This document shows positions 90 through 38,320 of a stretch of 64,000 nucleotides of DNA, one piece after another. Source of the DNA: Blepharisma stoltei ATCC 30299 (Eukaryota > Protista > Ciliophora). Location of the stretch: the NCBI GenBank assembly GCA_965603825.1, contig CBFDEM010000060.1, forward strand, positions 62,001-126,000, written 5' to 3'. The position numbers and the translations under genes are program-made. The notes beneath the pieces are model-generated. The model saw only the letters and a list, made by a program, of their open reading frames with translations. It ran no database searches and was not told where the DNA came from. The first letter of the stretch is position 1; each line of letters opens with the position of its first letter.

Positions 90-531
90 GTAATTATTAT
101 TATGATTGATTTATAAAGACTAAATTATGCTATTATAAGGGTATTAATGTACCTAGCAGTAAGCTCTTCAATAATTCTAAATAGCATTAGAGATAACGTT
201 TAATCTGAATATATGCAAAAAGAACCCAAAAAGTCGATAATCTATTTGTATTTGAGCCCCTTACTTTTAGTATAGGGTAACTTCACATTTCCAGGATTTA
301 CAATTTCCCTCGTTTTGAAAGCCATGTGAAATTTAATTTTAGCTTAGACTTGAACTAACAAAGTCTACTATCTCAGCTTTCCTGATAATTTCCATTATAA
401 ATTCTCTTGCCTAGCCTCTTCTAACTCTACTCAGTCTTTCAGCATCTGTACATTTTTGCTGTCCAAACTATATTATCAGCATAAAGAAGGGCTCAGGTGA
501 ATCCCTAGTTTTAGTTCTTCATTTCTTCACG

Positions 532-5380: not shown

Positions 5381-6339
5381 ATAATTATGATAATGATTAT
5401 GTTATAAAGAAATATAAATTAATGTACTTTGAAAAATGTTTTGAAAACAATAATCAAAATTTGTGCTAAAAAGATTGAAAAATTATCCAAGTCTCAGCAA
5501 ATGGACGGTTTCACTCTATTTAAATACCATTTTTTGTTTTCTTTCTGAATAAAGAATTTGTTTTTCTTGTTATTTAATGCGAGAAGAAAACATAGCATTA
5601 CCTAAGTGTGCAAAGTAAAAATAATAAATCTTATAACAATGCAAATGTAAAATAAGTATTAAGATATGGCAATTCGTAAAATGATAATTAGGATTTCCAA
5701 CACTGCATGTCGCTATTTTAATAGGATAAAGATAATCCATATGAATTATCAAGTGAATATGGGATCGCAACAATTGAAGTTCATGCCGTTGGAATCAAAA
5801 GTAACAGCCTTGCTGACCCCATAATTTTTGAGGCATTTAATGATTTTTTATTTCAACTCACTGATCTGCAGTCTCTAGTTCATAATTGGCAAAATATCAT
5901 TATGTGCTATCAGGTATATTTAGATATTAAACTATATATTGAAAATAGAAATAAGCTTTAAAATTTTGTCAGAATCAGATTTTTTTATCCAGATTAAGCG
6001 TGAAGTAAAAAATCGCATGATATTCAAACACTATATAACGCATCAATACCTATATTGTATATTGAATTATCGTAAAATAAGCATGAGCATTGGCCCTACC
6101 ATTAATCAAGATTATCAAAAATCTCTCTGCAAGTCAAATGCAAAGCCTTAGAGCCATTTCATATTTTGCTTGGCCAACTGCCTGCTCTACTACTCTCATA
6201 TCACTCCTGTCGTGACTAGAAGCGCAGGGTATAGAGTAAATTTTATTTAGAAAAAAGAGTGCATTGCAAAAAAAATTAAAGTCAATATTTAAGGCTAATT
6301 ATTGAAATCAGAAATAAATCCTAAATAGCGTTATGTAAA

Positions 6340-13004: not shown

Positions 13005-13757
13005 ATGCAAAGAGACTTCAAACTTCGGACTCGTCGTGATCAAGACTTTATTTCCCAACCCGACCCTGCATCTCATAACTTATCCAAAGGCTCAAAATCA
13101 TTCAAAAAGCTTCCAAGTATCTCAACTTCTGATGAAAAGAAAATAAGCCACGACTTATTAAGATCTTCCACAATTCCTATGAATTCTCCATCATCTCCAT
13201 GCTTACAAATCCCTATCAAAAATGAAATAGGAAAATTAAAAACCTTAGAAACATCTCAAATTAATGTAAATTTCATATAGAAAATTTCTGAATTAAAAAG
13301 AAAAATAAATCAGCAAAAAGAAGAAGTAAAGCAGCTTGAAAGAGAGAATGAAAATTTAAGAGTAATTGACTATGAGCACAGAGTTTTGCCGCTATCCCTT
13401 CAAAACGAAATGATAATAAGAGCTTTCCAACTGTCACAATTACAAGCCCAAATATATGAAGACCAAATAAATCAGCTAGAAGAGGAGCTTGAAGATCATA
13501 ATTACTGAAATTTCAATGAAAATGAAGACATTCATGCAGAATTAACCGAAGAAGAAATAGAGGTAAATTTTAAATAGAAAATTCCAATATTTATTGCTGA
13601 CTCAAATTATATTTGTTTGTGCTGCCAATGTGACATACCTGAAGATTCAGTTGCTAAAAGACTCCCAAACTGTGGACATTATTTTCATCTGGATTGCATT
13701 GATAACTGCCTGAGACACCAAGGTTGCTGCCCAATTTGTTATACAATAGCAATTTAG
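13005..13757 (+). CDS. Coiled-coil plus C-terminal RING-H2 protein (E3 ligase-like); introns 13266-13280 and 13563-13577
   Basis: Removing GTAAATTTCATATAG and GTAAATTTTAAATAG and reading one TGA as Trp yields CLCC...CGHYFHLDC...CPIC. Confidence 0.85.
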
Positions 13758-18812: not shown

Positions 18813-20226
18813 CTAAAATTTACGTTTAAGAAACTCTTGGAGGACTTCAGTGTTCCTCAGCGATGGAGGGGATTTTGATTTTAAGTCTTCAGGCTTTGTA
18901 AGGAGATTTATGGTCTTTTTTGGAGCAATTTTGGAGTAGGCCTTGGAGACTTGTTCGATGAAATCGTAATTAGACTCGACTAATGTTTTTTGAGAGGTAT
19001 TAAGAGGGGTCATTGAGTTTACCATCTTATGAATAGATTCTTGCAAATCAGTTTCAAGACGAGCAGTTAGGTCAGAATATTGCTGGCATAGAGAAGATAC
19101 TGTTTCTGACTGGATTTCTTGGAGTTGGGATTGGACAGCAGTTGAAATCTCATGATAAGATTTTTCGTTTTCATTGATTTTTGAAGGAATTTCTATATGA
19201 TTTTCTGATTCATTTCTGTATCGGAGGTTTATTGACTTTGCATCAATTTCTGAATTTTGGCTTAAAAAGTTCCCAGTTTCAATCTCCTTCAAGGTTTCTT
19301 CTAGTTTTCCTCACAGCTTATTTTCGACTCTTTTCCCGATCCTATCCCCTTCAATTTCGATATATTCTTGCATTTTAACCAGCCCAATTTCCAATCTTTC
19401 TCGAGCAATTTCTGTCCAAATATGGTTAATATGATCTCCAAAAGCACTTGAAACTAGCTGCACCCTTGATTTTATATTATTTTTAATCGCTTTTCGTTTG
19501 CCTGGCACATCCCCTACAACTAAACTTAAATCCACACTTCTTGAACGAAAATTTCTTTTTTTTTGATTTTTTGAATACAAAATTCCTTTTTGCCTGTCTT
19601 TTGGTGACATTAGTTGGATATATGATAAACTTTTTTGTAAAAAATTTCTTGATGATAACTCATCATTAAAAGATTTATGAAGGCTTGATTCAGCTTTTCT
19701 TGAAGAATTTAACGATAAAAAGTCTCTGATTTCTTCATTAGTTGCACGATCTATTGCTTTTTTTCCATACTAAATAGAAGTTTACACAATCACATTTATC
19801 GATATCAGCACCATTTCGTATCAGAATTTCCACTATTTCTTTATGGCTGTTATAAGCTGAAACCATAAGTGGGGTCCATTGACGGCAATCCTCTTTATTA
19901 ATATCTGCGCCTAATTCGATTAAATATTTTAGGATATCTCTTCTATTATATCAGCATGCTAGAAATACTAAATTTTGCCCAGCCTAAAGTTATTTTACCT
20001 TATTGCATTGGTTTATGTCAGAGTTTTTAGATAGTTCTTTGACAATTTGTATATTTCCGAGTTTTACAGCGATTGAGAGTGCTGTGTCTCCTTTCTAATT
20101 AAAATTCACATCATCAAAATCTTCGAGTTTTGAGCTGGGGGCGAGAGACTTGACAAGATTTATGTCATCTTTATCAACTGCCATCATAAGTGGCGTGTAG
20201 CCACCTAAAAGTTTGTTGGCAATCAT
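18813..20226 (-). CDS. Ankyrin-repeat protein; introns 20095-20109, 19984-19998 and 19770-19785
   Basis: Splicing three 15/15/16-nt GT-AG introns restores ankyrin motifs (GYTPLMMAV, GDTALSIAV, WTPLMVSA). It joins ORFs 19311 and 18813 via TGA. Confidence 0.85.
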
Positions 20227-22633: not shown

Positions 22634-22731
22634 ACATATGTACAAATGTAAATACTGAACAAAGAAAAATTCTTATAAATAATATTTAATACTTTTTATT
22701 AATATTTCTCTAAAGAAAAGGAGTAATAATT

Positions 22732-24543
22732 ATGGAAAATTCAGTCCGTAGACTTTCACTTATCAGCAACCATCTAGGACAGCACATTCCAAAGTACACA
22801 TGGTTCAAACCTGATGGCTGGGTAGGCTTTATTTAGGGATTTACAGACACAAAATTTTTCTTAAACAAGCAAAATCAAGTTTACCTTGGTGGAAATCGCT
22901 ATTTGGATTCAGGCAAAATTTTACCATCATTTGCACAATTTTTCCAAGATCAAGGATTAGAATTTGCTAATAAGTCTACAATACAGAAATCAATACCAGT
23001 TGACCCACCTGTAAGGAATCAGGACTTTTTGGATAGGATAAAGCAGTTTTCATTCTATGTGACTGAAGAGGATCAAGACCGTGCTTTTCACTCGCATGGA
23101 CACACATTACAAGAAATGTTTATTGTAAAGTTCGGAAAATTTGATAGAACAGTCGATCTTGTGGTTTATCCAGAAACTGAAGAGCATGTGGGAAACATCG
23201 TTAAACTCGCTAACGAGCTAAACGTTGTATTAGTCCCTTATGGAGGTGGAACAAATGTAACCCATGCTCTCCAGCTTGATCCCAACGAAAAAAGAACTAT
23301 CTGCTCAGTAGATCTTAGCAAGCTCAGCAAAGTCAAAGAAGTAAACAAAGAAAGCATGACTGCTGTAGTAGAGGCTGGAATTGCAGGAAAAGACTTAGAA
23401 AAAGAACTACTTAAGCATGGAGTTTGCTGTGGCCACGAGCCTGATTCAGTTGAATTTTCTACACTAGGCGGCTGGATCAGCACAAATGCATCAGGGATGA
23501 AGAAAAATATTTATGGAAATATTGACGACATTGTACTTACTATAAGAATAGTAACACCTTTAGGAACTTGGGAAAAGCCATGCAACGCTCCAAGAATGTC
23601 AACAGGACCTGACGTAAACCGAGTTTTAATCGGAAGTGAAGGCTTATTTGGGGTAATTTTTATCTAGATCATCACAAGTGCCACAATTAAAGTCAAACCT
23701 CTCCCAGCACACAAAGCATATGACTCCTATGTTTTCCCAAATTTTGAATTAGGCACAAAATTCATGAAGTTCTTAGGAGTAAACAACATCCGTCCAGCCA
23801 GTGTTCGGCTTGTTGACAATATGCAATTTCAGTTCGCCTTGTCCTTAAAACCAGCTGAGCACTCTATATTTAAGCATTTTATGGACAGAGTCAAAAAATT
23901 TTATTTATTAACTATAAAAGGATTTGACCCAAAACAAATATGCGCTTGCACACTGGTCTACGAAGGTAATAAAGAAGTGGTCGATTTGCAGCAGCATCAA
24001 ATAGACGAAGTCGCTAGAAATTTCAAAGGACTTCGTGGAGGCCCTGAAAACGGCCTCAGAGGGTATTTTTTGACCTATATGATTGCTTATCTTAGAGATT
24101 TTGGGATGGAGTATGACCTAGTCGCTGAGTCCTTTGAGACTGCTATATCTTGGGACAAATTAGATAATCTCCTTAAATCCTTGCCTGTAAAAATTATATA
24201 GAAATGCATAGAAGCTGCATGTGCTGCCAGAGGGGTTAAAAAAAGACCATTTGTGTCATCAAGAATTACACAAGTTTATGACACGGGGGCTTGCGTTTAC
24301 GTTTATTTTGGATTTTTCCATACAGGAGTCCCTGATCCAGTTAAAGTTTATTGTGAAGTTGAAGATGAGGCTAGAGAAGAAATTTTACGATGTGGAGGGT
24401 CATTAAGTCACCATCATGGAGTGGGGAAATTAAGGAAAAAATTCATGAATAAATGTGTGGGAGAGCCTGCACTTTCGATTTTGAGAGGCGTAAAGAAAGA
24501 AGTCGACCCTAAAAATATTTTTGCAAATGGGAACTTAATTTAA
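22732..24543 (+). CDS. AGPS: Alkyl-dihydroxyacetonephosphate synthase (peroxisomal FAD enzyme); introns 22822-22836, 23653-23667 and 24187-24201
   Basis: PYGGGTNV, GHEPDSVEFSTLGGW, SGMKKNIYGNI, SHHHGVGK and VDPKNIF motifs. N-terminal PTS2-like RLSLISNHL. Three 15-nt introns keep the frame. Confidence 0.93.
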
Positions 24544-27041: not shown

Positions 27042-27423
27042 CAGATTTAAATCTCTAAATTAATTTTTAAATCAGTAGTAGAAGTATGATTATTTTTCTT
27101 GTATGAATCAAAATATTTCGCAATTTTTATAATTTGCTTTATTTTAATGCATTGTGCGCTAAAAATAATTAATTATGTGTGAATCAAAAATACTTGATAA
27201 ATAGAGTTTTTAAAAATTTAGATATTAAACTTTAGATCAATAATAGCAATTAAGCAAAGCAAATAAATAAATTATCTTTGTCTTATATGTGTAATATTTT
27301 AAGTTTTGGGCAAATTAAAGGAAATTTAATTAATTTGTCTACAATACTAAATGATATCATCTTCATAATAAAAAATATTTTAAGCTTATTTCAGACTGTT
27401 CATAGGTTTTAAGCTAAGTTTAG

Positions 27424-27550
27424 TTACGGTGAGTAATGGTAGTCCCTGCCTCCAGCAGTACCATTCTGAAGTAGAAGTTGTGGAGTGGTAGAAACTCTTC
27501 AATGGCTTTCGCATTAGCATTTAGCTGGCTGAAAGACCATCTTATAGTAG
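27424..27550 (+). promoter_or_regulatory. Candidate structured cis-regulatory RNA (four-way junction) overlapping the putative start codon and 112-nt intron of the methyltransferase gene
   Basis: Four nested helices found by eye. G-U pairs favour the + strand. CTCCA/TGGAG loop-loop complementarity. Confidence 0.5.
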
Positions 27551-28372
27551 AGGTTTTTCTTAAGAAAATTTATTGCTAAGCGATTTTCAACAGATCTTTT
27601 TTCAGGACACTCTGATTTATACGCTAAATATCGCCCTAATTACCCTCAAGAACTTTTTGCTTATTTATCCTCTCTAACAAAATCCCATGATCTTGCATGA
27701 GATGTTGGAACAGGAAATGGCCAAGCTGCATTATCTTTAATACCATACTACTCTACAGTTATTGGAACTGATCTAAGCCAGCAGCAAATAGATATCGCCA
27801 GGTCTAAAAATTCTCCAATTATCTTTGAAGCGCTCCCAGCAGAACTATCAGCAGAAATCCTAAGCTCTCATAGCCTCCTGACATATGAAAAAATCGATTT
27901 AATTACTATAGCAACAGCATTACTTTATTTTGATTTAGATAGATTTTATGACACGGTTTATAAAGTTTTAAAACAAGATGGAGTAATCGCAGCTTGGACT
28001 TATGGAGTGCCAAATGTCGATGAAAATGTAGACCGTATCGCTAATAAAATTTACTGGGAAGTTTGCTATGAGTTTTTTGATAAAAGAAGAAAATATGTTG
28101 ATGAAAAATTCAAGACAATAGATTTCCCATTTGATGAAAATTTACCAGAACCTCCTGCTGCTGCTAAATCATTTACAAAAATTTGGAGCATTGAAGAATA
28201 TTGAGGAAATATTCATACGTGGTCAGGGGTCCAAAGAGCAAAAAAGGAACTAAATTTGGACCCTACAGAACCTTATTTTGCAGAACTCTGCAAGTACTGG
28301 CCTAGAAATGAGAAGAAACCAGTGGAGTTTCCACTTTATTTTCGTATAGGTAAAAAGAAATTGTCTTCTTAA
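27436..28372 (+). CDS. Class I SAM-dependent methyltransferase; start inferred as ATG 27436 plus intron 27439-27550
   Basis: Open frame 27551-28372 with YAKYRPNYP, A-W(TGA)-DVGTGNGQ (motif I), VIGTDLS and VLKQDGVIAAW. It has no in-frame ATG, so the start model is an inference. Confidence 0.8.
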
Positions 28373-28393
28373 TATTTGTATTATAATTATTAA

Positions 28394-28735
28394 ATGGCTT
28401 CCTCAGTCATATATTCCCTGCAAGAGTCTTTCAATATTCTAAAGGAGAAATACACAAAGGAGACTAAGAAAAGAACGAAGCTGGTTGATCTTTTTATTTC
28501 TTTCAACTTAATTTTGGCAACAATTCAGTATGTTTATATGAAAATTGCTGGAAGCTTTCCATTCAATGCATTTCTATCAGCATTTTTTTGTAGCATTGGA
28601 ACAGCAGTATTAACAGTGTGCCTGAGGATGCAAGTAGAGAATAAAAGTTCAGGGAAAACTGAAGAAAGAGCTTATGTGGAGTATATGTTCTGTTGCCTTA
28701 TATTATATTTGGTCTCATTTAATTATTTAGGCTAA
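28394..28735 (+). CDS. DAD1: Oligosaccharyltransferase subunit DAD1/OST2
   Basis: KLVDLF, IQYVY, GSFPFNAFLS, VCLRMQ, ERAYVEY and FNYLG signatures. Confidence 0.93.
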   Translation: MASSVIYSLQESFNILKEKYTKETKKRTKLVDLFISFNLILATIQYVYMKIAGSFPFNAFLSAFFCSIGTAVLTVCLRMQVENKSSGKTEERAYVEYMFCCLILYLVSFNYLG

Positions 28736-32511: not shown

Positions 32512-32582
32512 TGGTTCTACTGAGAATTGAACTCAGATCTCAGGATTCAAAGTCCTACGTGCTACCACTACACCATAGAACC
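32512..32582 (-). tRNA. tRNA-Gln (UUG)
   Basis: Acceptor stem GGTTCTA/TAGAACC, D arm with TGG, anticodon arm TAGGA-CTTTGAA-TCCTG, T arm CTGAG-TTCAATT-CTCAG, followed by a TTTTT Pol III terminator. Confidence 0.95.
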
Positions 32583-32706: not shown

Positions 32707-33811
32707 TTAGCCACTCCTTGGACTTATCGAATGTTTGAACGAATCCATTGGAGAGAATGGTGGCAGCACAAAAGACCTAGCTTGTGGAGATGGATTTTGT
32801 CCAAAAGCTTCATATTTTAAATAATCAGTTTTCCAATTATTGAAGCCATCAGCCAAGCCATATCCAGCTATTTCTGATTTTTGTATGTTTTCTGTAAGTT
32901 CCTGGACATTAAAGCCATCAAAATTAAAATTTGCTGTCACATCCTCACCAAAATTAAAGATTTTTTGTTGCCGGAAAGGACTACGCAAAAATGCAGTAGG
33001 TGTTATTATGCTGTGAGGGGTATTAGATTCACAATTTCCGACTGGCTCAGATATTTTTGAGGGTGAGTTTCCTTTTGAGGATTTTGATTTTTCATCACTG
33101 GATTGTTCGTATATAGAAATAAGAATATTGGGGAGATCTTCTTGAATTGGATCTATTGATATATTAGGCTTCTTTTTCATAGAATTTGGAGTTGGCTGAG
33201 GCACTGGAATCGGTTCAGTTAATTTTTCTTCCTCACTTTCCTTCTCTTCTTCTATTATTTCTTTTTTCAAACTAAGTCTTTCCGACCTTCTTAACATGGC
33301 TGGCTCTGTTTTCAATGGAATTTTAGCTATTGTATCGTGATGCGAATAAGCCATAATTACATCTAGAATTTCTTGATCCTGCAATAACTGCTTTACAGAC
33401 CCAGTAATCCTCTCATTCTGAGGTCTCTTCCTATTATGTCTCCTCAAATTTTTCCTAATTGTGCTGTAAAAATGATTTTTTATTCCATTATCAGACCTTC
33501 CAGGCAAATGTTTTGCTATCTCAGACCATCTATTTCCATACAGTTTTTGGTACTGAAAAATGATGTCTTCTTCTTCTTTGCTCCAAGTATCCTTTGAAAT
33601 TTGTGGATCTATGTGATTATGCCAGCGTTCTCTGCATTGTTTGCCTGATCTAATATAAAATTTACCTTCCTTTAATGCCATATCGCTCTTGGAGATATTG
33701 AGAAATTTGTGTCCAATGTTTTACTCCGTATTCTTCTACTAGTGCTCGTATTGCGTCATCTTCCTATGTTAAGGTTACGTCTTGAGTCCAGGCTTTACGT
33801 TCAGTTGACAT
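32707..33811 (-). CDS. Two-repeat Myb transcription factor; introns 33764-33778 and 33650-33665
   Basis: The spliced N-terminus reads [23 protein letters not shown]...[36 protein letters not shown]. Confidence 0.93.
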
Positions 33812-34024
33812 TTTTAGGAAATGTAAAAAGTTATTTAAAATATACCTGAAGCTAATACGTTACAAATTATGAATATTTGGAGAAAGTTAGATTTCTTAAG
33901 GACTTATTATTAGCATTTCTAGTTCTTATTTTAAGGTTTTTCTATTTTTGTAACTTAGTTTTATTTTTCAAAAAAATAGTTAAAATAGTATAATTAACTA
34001 AGGTAATCAAATAAATATTGATTT

Positions 34025-37584: not shown

Positions 37585-37779
37585 ATATTTTTAATGAGAA
37601 ATATAAAAGTTGACTATTTAGAAAAGTAATAAATTTTTATTTTTGTGGATTTTAAGAGCCTAATATGGGATTGAGAGCCTTTAATAATTGGTTTAGTTAA
37701 ATATGTAACAGAAATTAAAATATTTGATCTTAGGCAAAATTTATTTTAGAATTTCTGAAAATAGTAGTTTATATGATAT

Positions 37780-37829
37780 GCTTTTTTGCCTTGAGTGGCG
37801 CCCATACCGCGCCACTTAAGGCAAAAAGC
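37780..37829. repeat. Near-perfect 21/22-bp inverted repeat (hairpin) in an intergenic region
   Basis: GCTTTTTTGCCTTGAGTGGCGC-CCATACC-GCGCCACTTAAGGCAAAAAGC. Confidence 0.9.
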
Positions 37830-38320
37830 TATAATTTATTTTAAAATCTAGAATAACCATTCAGAGTCTATCGTCGCTATTTCTAATTGTTCTTGGTAAA
37901 TTAAATTTTCTTTTTTATTTAGTTATTTAAGAAATCAGGAGCACTTAGAGAGAATAATATGATATCAGCTCTTAAAACTACTATAAAGTCATAAATTTTC
38001 TTTCTTTAATTTTCTTAGTTGAGATTAACTTTCCACATGTAGCTTAGCCATAAATGGTGAATTTAATTTACATTGATTTTATATTTAAAGCTTAATTTCT
38101 ATAGCGTTTCATAGTAAAAGCTTTTTCTTAGTCTGACAGTATCTGATGTAGAAGTGATGCTAATTTTAAGCCTTTATCCAAATTTTTTAATCGCTTAAAA
38201 TTTTTCAAAATTCTCTTAGAGATTGAATAATTTATTTTCATTCTCTCGTTTTCTCTTTTTAAATTTTATATAATGCATTCTTTTCAAAAATTACCTCCCA
38301 GCTTTTTAATAATTTTAATT

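What the first reader, a model, noticed from the sequence alone, without database searches (positions are those of the whole stretch)
27424..27550. Four-way-junction RNA with possible kissing loop that buries the start codon and splice sites of a SAM-methyltransferase gene (riboswitch-like candidate)
Seen in sequence: a GC-enriched island in AT-rich DNA folds into four helices joined by 0-1 nt linkers. P1 is 27424-33/27541-50 (9 of 10 pairs). P2 is AATGGTA 27435-41/TACCATT 27459-65 plus CTGC/GCAG, with loop CTCCA. P3 is TGAAG 27467-71/CTTCA 27497-501 plus AGTT/AACT, with TGGAG 27481-85 in its loop, complementary to the P2 loop. P4 is ATGG-CTTTC 27502-10/GAAAG-A-CCAT 27531-40 plus TTAGC/GCTGG. 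Five G-U pairs work only on the + strand, the sense of the downstream gene. P2 sequesters ATG 27436 and the adjacent GTAGT donor, while P1 sequesters a second donor (GTGAGT 27429) and the TAG-TAG acceptor. Established: fungal TPP riboswitches switch alternative 5' splice sites and uORFs, and bacterial SAM-I riboswitches are four-way junctions with a pseudoknot. This sequence matches neither consensus as far as I can see. Inference: an undescribed cis-regulatory RNA, possibly SAM/Met-responsive. An independent Pol III ncRNA ending at TTTTT 27554-58 is an alternative.
Basis: partly seen in the sequence, partly recalled or inferred. Interest (0 to 1): 0.9.

Follow-up and report, generated by a model that had tools for sequence, protein, structure and literature searches.

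The report
Probable long intron after start codon
The GC-rich "four-way junction" is most likely an unusually long (112-nt) intron sitting right after the start codon of an unannotated methyltransferase gene in the ciliate Blepharisma stoltei; nothing supports a riboswitch, and no RNA data could be obtained to prove the splice.

Summary
The window is Blepharisma stoltei macronuclear DNA, in which TGA codes for Trp. The fold, however, is no more stable than shuffled sequence (z about -0.9 to -1.1). The element matches no Rfam family, tRNA or snoRNA layout, has no snRNA-type promoter box, and has no second copy in the genome. What is unusual is its composition: 44% GC, against 26% in non-ORF DNA and 35% in coding DNA. 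The gene context is also unusual. The downstream SAM-methyltransferase ORF (27551-28369) has no ATG in 273 codons and opens directly after TAG-TAG. The start codons of its two paralogs align without gaps to its first codon. The gene is missing from the public annotation, whose intron caller accepted only introns of 10-99 nt. The simplest working gene model is ATG 27436-38 followed by a phase-0 GT...AG intron at 27439-27550, joined to AGG 27551. I give this about 0.42. The rivals are a start-codon-loss pseudogene or non-AUG start, an independent small RNA, and a frameshifted N-terminal extension. Neither RNA-seq reads nor orthologous loci could be reached, so splicing and covariation remain untested.

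The parts
27436..27438 (+). Proposed start codon (ATG) of the methyltransferase gene, forming the coding part of exon 1
   Evidence: This ATG sits directly before a GT, and splicing from that GT to AG 27550 puts it in frame with the ORF. The ORF itself has no ATG. This is an inferred start, not one shown by RNA data.
27439..27550 (+). Proposed 112-nt phase-0 spliceosomal intron (GTAGTC...TTATAGTAG), 44.6% GC
   Evidence: The 3' end has TAG with an A at -7, as described for 16-nt introns of this species. The GTAG donor was not seen among 15 sampled tiny introns. No RNA evidence was obtained.
27424..27550 (+). P1 pairs the last bases before the ATG with the 3' end of the proposed intron, and P2 pairs AAUGGUA (the ATG plus donor) with UACCAUU.
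   Evidence: The helices are present, but the total energy is at shuffle level.
27459..27490 (+). Alternative 9-bp pairing of UACCAUUCU (27459-67) with GGAGUGGUA (27482-90). It excludes P2 and would leave the ATG and donor unpaired. TGGTAG occurs twice (27437-42 and 27486-91).
   Evidence: MFE fold of the intron alone and the sequence itself. Its significance was not tested.
27551..28372 (+). Class I SAM-dependent methyltransferase ORF of 273 codons plus a TAA stop. TGA codes for Trp at 27698 and 28202. It belongs to the Methyltransf_11/25 family (the DDB_G0268948-like group).
   Evidence: It has no in-frame ATG and keeps 48 of 59 family-conserved columns. It is not annotated in CAJZBQ010000060.1.
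27545..27550 (+). Tandem TAG-TAG in the ORF's frame. It closes the frame upstream and provides NAGNAG-type acceptors, of which only the second (27550) gives an open frame.
27554..27558 (+). T5 run, which lies inside codons 2-3 of the ORF (TTT TTC = Phe-Phe).
   Evidence: The run falls within the ORF's first codons, whose N-terminal region aligns to both paralogs. The same 9-mer AGGTTTTTC encodes Arg-Phe-Phe, at a different position, in the paralog of L003.

Best explanation
The GC-rich island is the first intron of an unannotated SAM-dependent methyltransferase gene. Transcription is inferred to start some tens of bases upstream of 27436. Exon 1 carries a short leader plus the ATG at 27436-38. 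A 112-nt phase-0 intron (27439-27550, GTAGTC...TAGTAG) is removed, and the ATG is joined to AGG 27551, giving M-RFFLRKFIAKRFSTDLFSG... If the intron is retained, the ribosome reads a 12-codon dead end (ATG...TAG 27472), so the enzyme is made only from spliced RNA. The hairpins are what a 44% GC sequence of this length forms anyway. They overlap the ATG/donor (P2) and the branch/acceptor region (P1) and may lower splicing efficiency, but nothing shows that they are selected or bind a ligand. What is shown: the ORF anatomy, the paralog alignment, the missing annotation, the composition and the lack of excess folding energy. What is inferred: the splicing itself, the transcript start and any effect of the structure.
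For: (1) The ORF 27551-28369 has no ATG in 273 codons and begins directly after two in-frame TAGs. It is the only homology-supported ORF in the window without a Met near its start. (2) It looks like a live gene. Motif I DVGTGNGQAA is intact and 48 of 59 family-conserved columns are kept, against 52-53 in the paralogs; most of its own changes there are aromatic-to-aromatic. A 73-bp germline IES inside it is cleanly absent from the somatic sequence. (3) Both B. stoltei paralogs start with an ATG that aligns without gaps to our codon 27551. The basic N-terminal segment is shared, so coding must begin at or before 27551. (4) ATG 27436 followed by GT, and AG 27549-50 followed by AGG, give an in-frame join that adds just one Met. 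The acceptor has TAG and an A at -7, as reported for this species' 16-nt introns. (5) The published annotation took only introns matching a two-digit length (10-99 nt). No gene is annotated between the SH3 gene and DAD1 in the NCBI record, and no identical protein is in the protein database. That is what a 112-nt start-proximal intron would cause. (6) Introns in Blepharisma are mostly phase 0 and biased to the 5' end.
Against: In this species 97% of introns are 15-16 nt and AT-rich, whereas this one is 112 nt and 44.6% GC. Its donor is GTAG, while 10 of 15 sampled tiny introns have GTAA and none has GTAG. An ATG-GT within a few hundred bases upstream of an AG is not rare by chance: 20 single-intron models pass the frame test. 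A point mutation ATG to AGG at 27551 would explain the missing start equally well. Unannotated status fits a pseudogene too. The conserved HWF and YW motifs are changed to LYF and FF.
Confidence: 0.42

Rival explanations
1. Start-codon loss. The ancestral ATG at 27551 mutated to AGG, so the methyltransferase is a young pseudogene or is translated weakly from a near-cognate codon such as ATT 27572. On this view the GC island upstream is an unrelated insertion or relic, and its helices are chance.
For: The paralog start codons align exactly to AGG 27551, one base change away from ATG. The gene is unannotated. Conserved HWF and YW motifs are altered. The fold is at chance level.
Against: The ORF is still open for 273 codons in an AT-rich genome, and 48 of 59 conserved columns are kept with mostly conservative changes. 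A second, unexplained event is needed to put 44% GC DNA directly against the start, whereas the paralogs have pure AT-rich leaders. AGG is among the poorest near-cognate starts (general knowledge).
Confidence: 0.25
2. An independent small structured RNA of about 130 nt and unknown class is transcribed from 27424-27553 and ends at the T5 run. The methyltransferase ORF downstream is separate.
For: The GC content (44%) equals that of this genome's tRNA, U6, U1 and rRNA (44-52%) and is rare in non-coding DNA. A terminal helix is followed 3 nt later by T5. G-U pairs favour the plus strand.
Against: There is no Rfam hit at E<=10 and no tRNA. The upstream box TGTCCCATAA, shared by U6 and both U1 genes, is absent. 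An A-box-like site has no B box, and there is no C box or H/ACA layout. rRNA complementarity is at most 10 nt, as in shuffles. No second copy is found by BLAST or by covariance model. The fold z is about -1. The T5 lies in the ORF's first codons, within the N-terminal region shared with the paralogs.
Confidence: 0.13
3. The island is, or was, coding: an N-terminal extension starting at ATG 27502 (MAFALAFSWLKDHLIVEVF...). It would be joined to the enzyme by a 34-nt or 28-nt intron ending at 27580, by a +1 shift at TAA 27577, or it was broken by a 1-nt insertion in the T run.
For: The frame of ATG 27436/27502 has one stop in 47 codons. Intron models 27547-27580 and 27553-27580 pass the frame test. 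Deleting one T from the run would fuse the frames (reading).
Against: Codon-usage scores of all island frames (0.0-0.05) lie about 1.5 sd below true coding (0.19 +/- 0.10). A 28-34-nt intron would have been visible to the published caller, yet no gene was called. These models delete or recode the RFFLRKFIAK segment that aligns to the paralogs. One stop in 47 codons is within chance. The paralogs have no such extension.
Confidence: 0.1
4. One reading: a ligand-responsive (SAM/Met-like) four-way-junction RNA that switches between hiding and exposing the ATG and splice sites.
For: P2 covers the ATG and donor, and P1 covers the acceptor (pair probabilities 0.6-0.8). A mutually exclusive 9-bp alternative for the 3' strand of P2 exists. 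The gene is a SAM-dependent enzyme.
Against: There is no excess folding stability. P3 and the kissing loop are disfavoured. No aptamer family matches. The element is single-copy with no homologue to test covariation. The two paralogs of the same enzyme lack the element.
Confidence: 0.04

Closest known systems
Spliceosomal introns of heterotrich ciliates (Blepharisma, Stentor)
   Same: It shares GT...AG borders, phase 0, a position at the extreme 5' end of the gene, a TAG 3' end with an A at -7, and a retained form that runs into a premature stop.
   Different: It is 112 nt long instead of 15-16 nt (97% of introns) and 44.6% GC instead of AT-rich. Its donor is GTAG rather than the usual GTAA. 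It is longer than the 99-nt ceiling of the published intron caller.
TPP riboswitch-controlled alternative splicing in fungi and plants
   Same: Both have structured RNA near the start of a gene that overlaps a 5' splice site, and intron retention gives a short dead-end ORF.
   Different: It matches neither the TPP aptamer nor any other Rfam aptamer. There is no excess folding energy, no conservation data and no ligand evidence.
SAM-I riboswitch (bacterial four-way junction with pseudoknot)
   Same: Only the drawn topology is shared: four helices plus a possible loop-loop contact next to a SAM-related gene.
   Different: The SAM-I riboswitch is bacterial and acts through a transcription terminator. 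There is no consensus match in Rfam, and the loop-loop partner prefers a local hairpin.
Intron-hosted snoRNAs
   Same: The element is a GC-rich segment of about 100 nt inside an otherwise unnecessary long intron. Unchecked notes from other first-stage readers of this genome claim 80-nt and 109-nt snoRNA-bearing introns.
   Different: It has no C box (at most 1 mismatch allowed), no H/ACA hairpin-hinge-hairpin layout with pockets, and no rRNA complementarity above shuffles.
Structured yeast introns whose stems change splice-site spacing or access
   Same: Stems link the exon-1 end and 5' splice-site region with the intron's 3' end.
   Different: Here the stems would cover the sites rather than merely shorten the distance between them, and they are not more stable than chance.

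Membership tests
Spliceosomal intron (Blepharisma type) | GT...AG borders whose removal restores an open, homology-supported reading frame | tested here: met
   Removing 27439-27550 joins ATG to AGG 27551 in frame. The N-terminus then matches the paralogs with one extra Met.
Spliceosomal intron (Blepharisma type) | Spliced reads across the junction | not testable with these tools
Spliceosomal intron (Blepharisma type) | Typical signals: GTAA donor, branch A at -6 or -7, TAG end, 15-16 nt, AT-rich | tested here: inconclusive
   TAG and an A at -7 are present. The donor is GTAG, seen in 0 of 15 sampled introns. The length is 112 nt and GC is 44.6%.
Riboswitch (TPP, SAM-I or any Rfam aptamer) | Match to an aptamer covariance model | tested here: not met
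   There is no hit at gathering score. At E<=10 over 27300-27700 only two noise hits appear, and both lie outside the element.
Riboswitch (TPP, SAM-I or any Rfam aptamer) | Structure conserved with covariation in relatives | not testable with these tools
   No orthologous locus was found. There is no second copy in the genome.
Riboswitch (TPP, SAM-I or any Rfam aptamer) | Folding stability beyond composition | tested here: not met
   z is -1.09, -0.89 and -0.84.
Box C/D snoRNA | C box RUGAUGA near the 5' end, D box CUGA near the 3' end, and a guide of at least 10-12 nt to rRNA ending next to D or D' | tested here: not met
   No C box with at most 1 mismatch on either strand. The best rRNA complementarity is 10 nt, as in shuffles, and is not next to CUGA.
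Box H/ACA snoRNA | Hairpin-H box-hairpin-ACA layout with internal pseudouridylation pockets | tested here: not met
   The hairpins are near-continuous stems with linkers of 0-1 nt. The only ANANNA sites lie at 27534, 27544 and 27563, after the last hairpin.
snRNA-type small RNA gene of this genome | Upstream box TGTCCCATAA about 47-52 nt before the RNA start, as at U6 and both U1 loci | tested here: not met
   There is no copy with at most 1 mismatch within 2 kb of the element.
tRNA-type Pol III gene | Internal A and B boxes, or a cloverleaf recognised by tRNA finders | tested here: not met
   ARAGORN finds none, and Rfam tRNA hits only 32512-32582. There is an A-box-like site at 27478 (2 mismatches) but no B box downstream.
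U1 snRNA (four-way junction) | Match to the U1 model and a 5' ACUUACC | tested here: not met
   U1 genes lie elsewhere, on C29 and C18. The element has no U1 hit.
Ciliate telomerase RNA | A template complementary to the telomere repeat (a permutation of CCCTAACA) | tested here: not met
   Neither CCCTAA nor TTAGGG occurs in 27424-27560 (reading).
Class I SAM-dependent methyltransferase (Methyltransf_11/25) - the downstream gene | Motif I and overall similarity to family members | tested here: met
   There are 111 homologues at E<=1e-5, all carrying PF08241/PF13649. DVGTGNGQAA is intact and 48 of 59 conserved columns are kept.

The most novel reading that the evidence does not exclude
A genome whose spliceosome handles almost only 15-16-nt introns keeps one structured, GC-rich 112-nt intron directly after a start codon as a regulated gate. 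Two exclusive foldings (P1/P2 hiding the ATG, donor and acceptor, versus the 27459-67/27482-90 helix freeing them) would decide between productive splicing and a 12-codon dead end, possibly in response to a metabolite or protein linked to methyl-group metabolism.
Probability: 0.05. Interest if true: 0.8.

Novelty: new member of a known kind. Interest (0 to 1): 0.35.

Why it matters
If the splice is confirmed, it shows two things. Blepharisma can remove introns seven times longer than its norm. And the published gene set systematically misses genes that depend on introns of 100 nt or more, because the intron caller took only two-digit lengths. That is a practical correction to the annotation and a useful test case for how a 'tiny-intron' spliceosome copes with a long, GC-rich substrate. 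If instead the start codon was simply lost, this is an ordinary young pseudogene. Either way, the riboswitch reading that gave the finding its high score has no support.

Tried and rejected
- **Joined exon model.** Exons were searched separately, by reference only.
- **Orthologous loci.**
  - The N-terminal exon piece found nothing.
  - The neighbouring DAD1 gene led to a related heterotrich assembly (SRR24908292) without synteny.
  - The exhaustive protein search gave a 59%-identical fragment from the same run. It starts with a plain ATG and is closer to the paralogs.
  - The metagenome scan gave only homologues of 45% identity or less.
- **Known RNA classes.** Rejected after testing: Rfam families, tRNA, U1 (40), telomerase RNA (no template), C/D and H/ACA snoRNA, PSE-driven snRNA-type gene (41, 42) and A/B-box Pol III gene (69).
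- **Repeat, introner or IES.** The element is single-copy by BLAST and by covariance model. It is present unchanged in the MAC+IES record and is not one of its inserted IESs.
- **Coding exon.** No frame has a coding-like codon score.
- **Genome-sample scan for long introns by ORF joining (200 kb plus the window).** This was useless for long lengths, because false positives swamp it. It gave only donor and acceptor counts for tiny introns.
- **Other GC islands in the window.** Checked for ORFs and rRNA guides, with nothing clear.

Full report
**Source and code.** The genome has 41.46 Mb in 64 contigs. TGA stands where homologues have Trp. The neighbouring DAD1 gene is found in GCA_914767885.1, record CAJZBQ010000060.1. 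Together these identify the Blepharisma stoltei ATCC 30299 macronuclear genome. The window is contig C60 62,001-126,000. The NCBI record of 861,209 bp is the same contig (652,986 bp in G000) with germline IESs inserted. The element at 27424-27550 is identical in both and is not one of the inserted IESs.

**Observation.** The island is compositionally real. It is 44% GC, against 25.7 +/- 6.2% for non-ORF windows (only 1.3% reach 42%) and 34.8 +/- 5.3% for coding windows (4.3% reach 44.6%). That equals the GC of this genome's tRNA (44%), U6 (46%), U1 (45-52%) and rRNAs (47-52%).

The folding is not special:
- The MFE is -33.4 kcal/mol against -29.7 +/- 3.4 for shuffles, z -1.09. My own shuffles gave -0.89 and -0.84.
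The TGGAG assigned to a kissing loop pairs locally instead.
- P2 and P4 taken alone give z -3.25 and -2.59, but with bounds chosen to fit them.
- Windows inside the coding region reach z -3.3 and -3.6, so the island is no outlier along the locus.

**What it is not.**
- There is no Rfam family at gathering score in the whole window except a tRNA-Gln at 32512-32582.
- At E<=10 in 27300-27700 there are only two noise hits, both outside the element.
- ARAGORN finds no tRNA.
- U1 genes lie on C29 and C18, and U6 lies on C53.
- Those three genes share an upstream box TGTCCCATAA about 47-52 nt before the RNA start. The element has none, and no copy with at most 1 mismatch lies within 2 kb.
- There is no C box with at most 1 mismatch on either strand, no B box after the single A-box-like site, and no H/ACA layout.
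- Complementarity to the genome's own 18S, 5.8S and 28S is at most 10 nt, the modal range of shuffles.
- No permutation of the telomere repeat is present, so it is not the missing telomerase RNA.
- It is single-copy by BLAST and by a covariance model built from its structure, searched at E<=10.

**The gene context is the informative part.**
- The ORF 27551-28369 (273 codons, two TGA Trp codons) is a Methyltransf_11/25 enzyme of the DDB_G0268948-like group. It has 111 homologues at E<=1e-5.
- It contains no ATG at all and opens directly after TAG-TAG at 27545-50. Among the window's ORFs of 150 codons or more, it is the only homology-supported one without a Met near its start.
- B. stoltei has two paralogs (53-55% identity). 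Both start with a plain ATG, and the alignment is gapless over the basic N-terminal segment: MISTRKISARFFSKDLFSG and MKLLRRSSQRFFSKDLFSG against RFFLRKFIAKRFSTDLFSG. Their Met therefore falls on our codon 27551.
- The enzyme looks maintained. Motif I is intact, and 48 of 59 family-conserved columns are kept, against 52-53 in the paralogs. Its own changes there are mostly aromatic-to-aromatic (HW to LY, YW to FF).
- A 73-bp IES interrupts it in the germline-containing record and is absent from the somatic sequence.
- No gene is annotated between the SH3-domain gene and DAD1 in the NCBI record. No identical protein of 92-292 aa exists in the protein database.

**Gene model.** Coding must begin at or before 27551, and the frame is closed upstream, so an ATG has to be brought in. 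Enumerating every ATG plus one GT...AG intron gives 20 frame-compatible models. The one that keeps the whole paralog-aligned N-terminus and adds only a Met is ATG 27436-38 | GTAGTC...TTATAGTAG (27439-27550, 112 nt, phase 0) | AGG 27551.

- Its 3' end fits what the genome paper describes for 16-nt introns: TAG, with an A at -7.
- Blepharisma introns are mostly phase 0 and 5'-biased.
- Its donor GTAG is atypical. Among 15 tiny introns recovered by ORF joining in the window plus 200 kb, the donors are GTAA 10, GTAC 2, GTAT 2 and GTTA 1. A G at +4 can still wobble-pair with the U of the U1 5' end seen; this last point is inference.
- The authors' intron caller used a pattern that accepts only two-digit intron lengths. 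A 112-nt intron could therefore never enter the annotation, and an ORF with no ATG could not be called. This matches the gap in the record.
- Unspliced RNA would translate 12 codons from ATG 27436 to TAG 27472 and stop.

**Why I stay at 0.42.**
- There is no RNA evidence.
- An ATG-GT upstream of an AG is not rare by chance.
- A single ATG to AGG change at 27551 would also explain the missing start.
- The intron would be an extreme outlier in length and GC, since 97% of introns are 15-16 nt.

**Rivals.**
- **Start-codon-loss pseudogene or weak non-AUG start (0.25).** This leaves the GC island as a second, unexplained event.
- **Independent small RNA of unknown class (0.13).** It is supported only by composition, the terminal helix and the T5. 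The T5 lies in the first codons of the ORF.
- **Coding extension from ATG 27502 (0.10).** It would be joined by a short intron or frameshift, or broken by one. It is weakened by codon scores of 0.0-0.05 against 0.19 +/- 0.10 for true coding. A 28-34-nt intron would also have been visible to the published caller.

**Comparative tests could not be made.**
- The N-terminal piece found no protein.
- DAD1 led to a related heterotrich assembly (Logan SRR24908292) without synteny.
- The exhaustive search found, in the same run, a 151-aa fragment at 59% identity. It starts with a plain ATG, keeps HWF, and is therefore nearer the paralogs.
- The metagenome scan returned only homologues of 45% identity or less.

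**Earlier notes.** Other first-stage notes on this genome claim introns of 41, 47, 80 and 109 nt, two of them with snoRNAs. They are unchecked titles. I used them only as a prompt for the snoRNA tests, which were negative here.

**Verdict.** The sequence features are real, but the structure is not beyond chance, and there is no evidence for a riboswitch. The most likely reading is an exceptional long intron that hides the start of a missed methyltransferase gene. One mapping of existing RNA-seq with a higher intron-length ceiling would settle it.

Noticed in passing
L009:1380-1500, L010 (minus strand) and L011, upstream of U6 and the two U1 genes: U6 and both U1 loci share the box TGTCCCATAA, ending about 47-52 nt before the RNA start, followed by a TATA-like stretch. 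This is probably the snRNA-type proximal element of Blepharisma. A genome-wide scan for this box followed by a GC island could list unannotated small RNA genes, perhaps including the telomerase RNA that the genome paper could not find.
   Followed up: partly
L011:1501-1661 (G000 C18:451628-451788): The second U1 copy scores below the Rfam cut-off (55.9 against 69.5 bits) and has an altered 5' end: AATTACAATGG instead of CACTTACCTGG. It still carries the upstream box. It may be a variant U1 with a different 5' splice-site register, or a decaying copy.
   Followed up: no
window 27551-28369: This SAM-methyltransferase ORF is absent from the NCBI annotation of CAJZBQ010000060.1. It has zero Met codons in 273.
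   Followed up: yes
window 27921/27922 (L006:2457-2526): A roughly 73-bp AT-rich germline IES interrupts the methyltransferase ORF in the MAC+IES record and is precisely absent from the somatic sequence. At least eight IESs lie within the 6.6 kb of L006.
   Followed up: partly
window 28370-28394: The DAD1 (oligosaccharyltransferase subunit) gene starts only 21 nt after the methyltransferase stop codon (TAA 28370-72, ATG 28394). Its promoter must therefore lie inside the upstream coding region, or the two genes are co-transcribed.
   Followed up: no
L004:1348-3504 (G000 C57:624545-626701): The paralogous methyltransferase ORF on C57 runs on without a TAA or TAG stop into at least 440 further codons of unrelated sequence. 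This could be a fusion, a tiny intron carrying the stop, or a TGA used as a stop.
   Followed up: no
window 400-511, 951-1055, 6081-6194, 13613-13748, 20048-20161, 22719-22837, 33721-33826, 37778-37880: These are other non-ORF islands of at least 40% GC. None has a gathering-score Rfam hit or clear rRNA complementarity. The best is 12 nt to 18S, on the minus strand at 6100. They may be short exons or unknown small RNAs.
   Followed up: partly
window 27437-27442 and 27486-27491: TGGTAG occurs twice in the island. Each copy can pair with TACCA at 27459-63, giving two mutually exclusive helices. One covers the ATG and donor, and the other leaves them free.
   Followed up: partly
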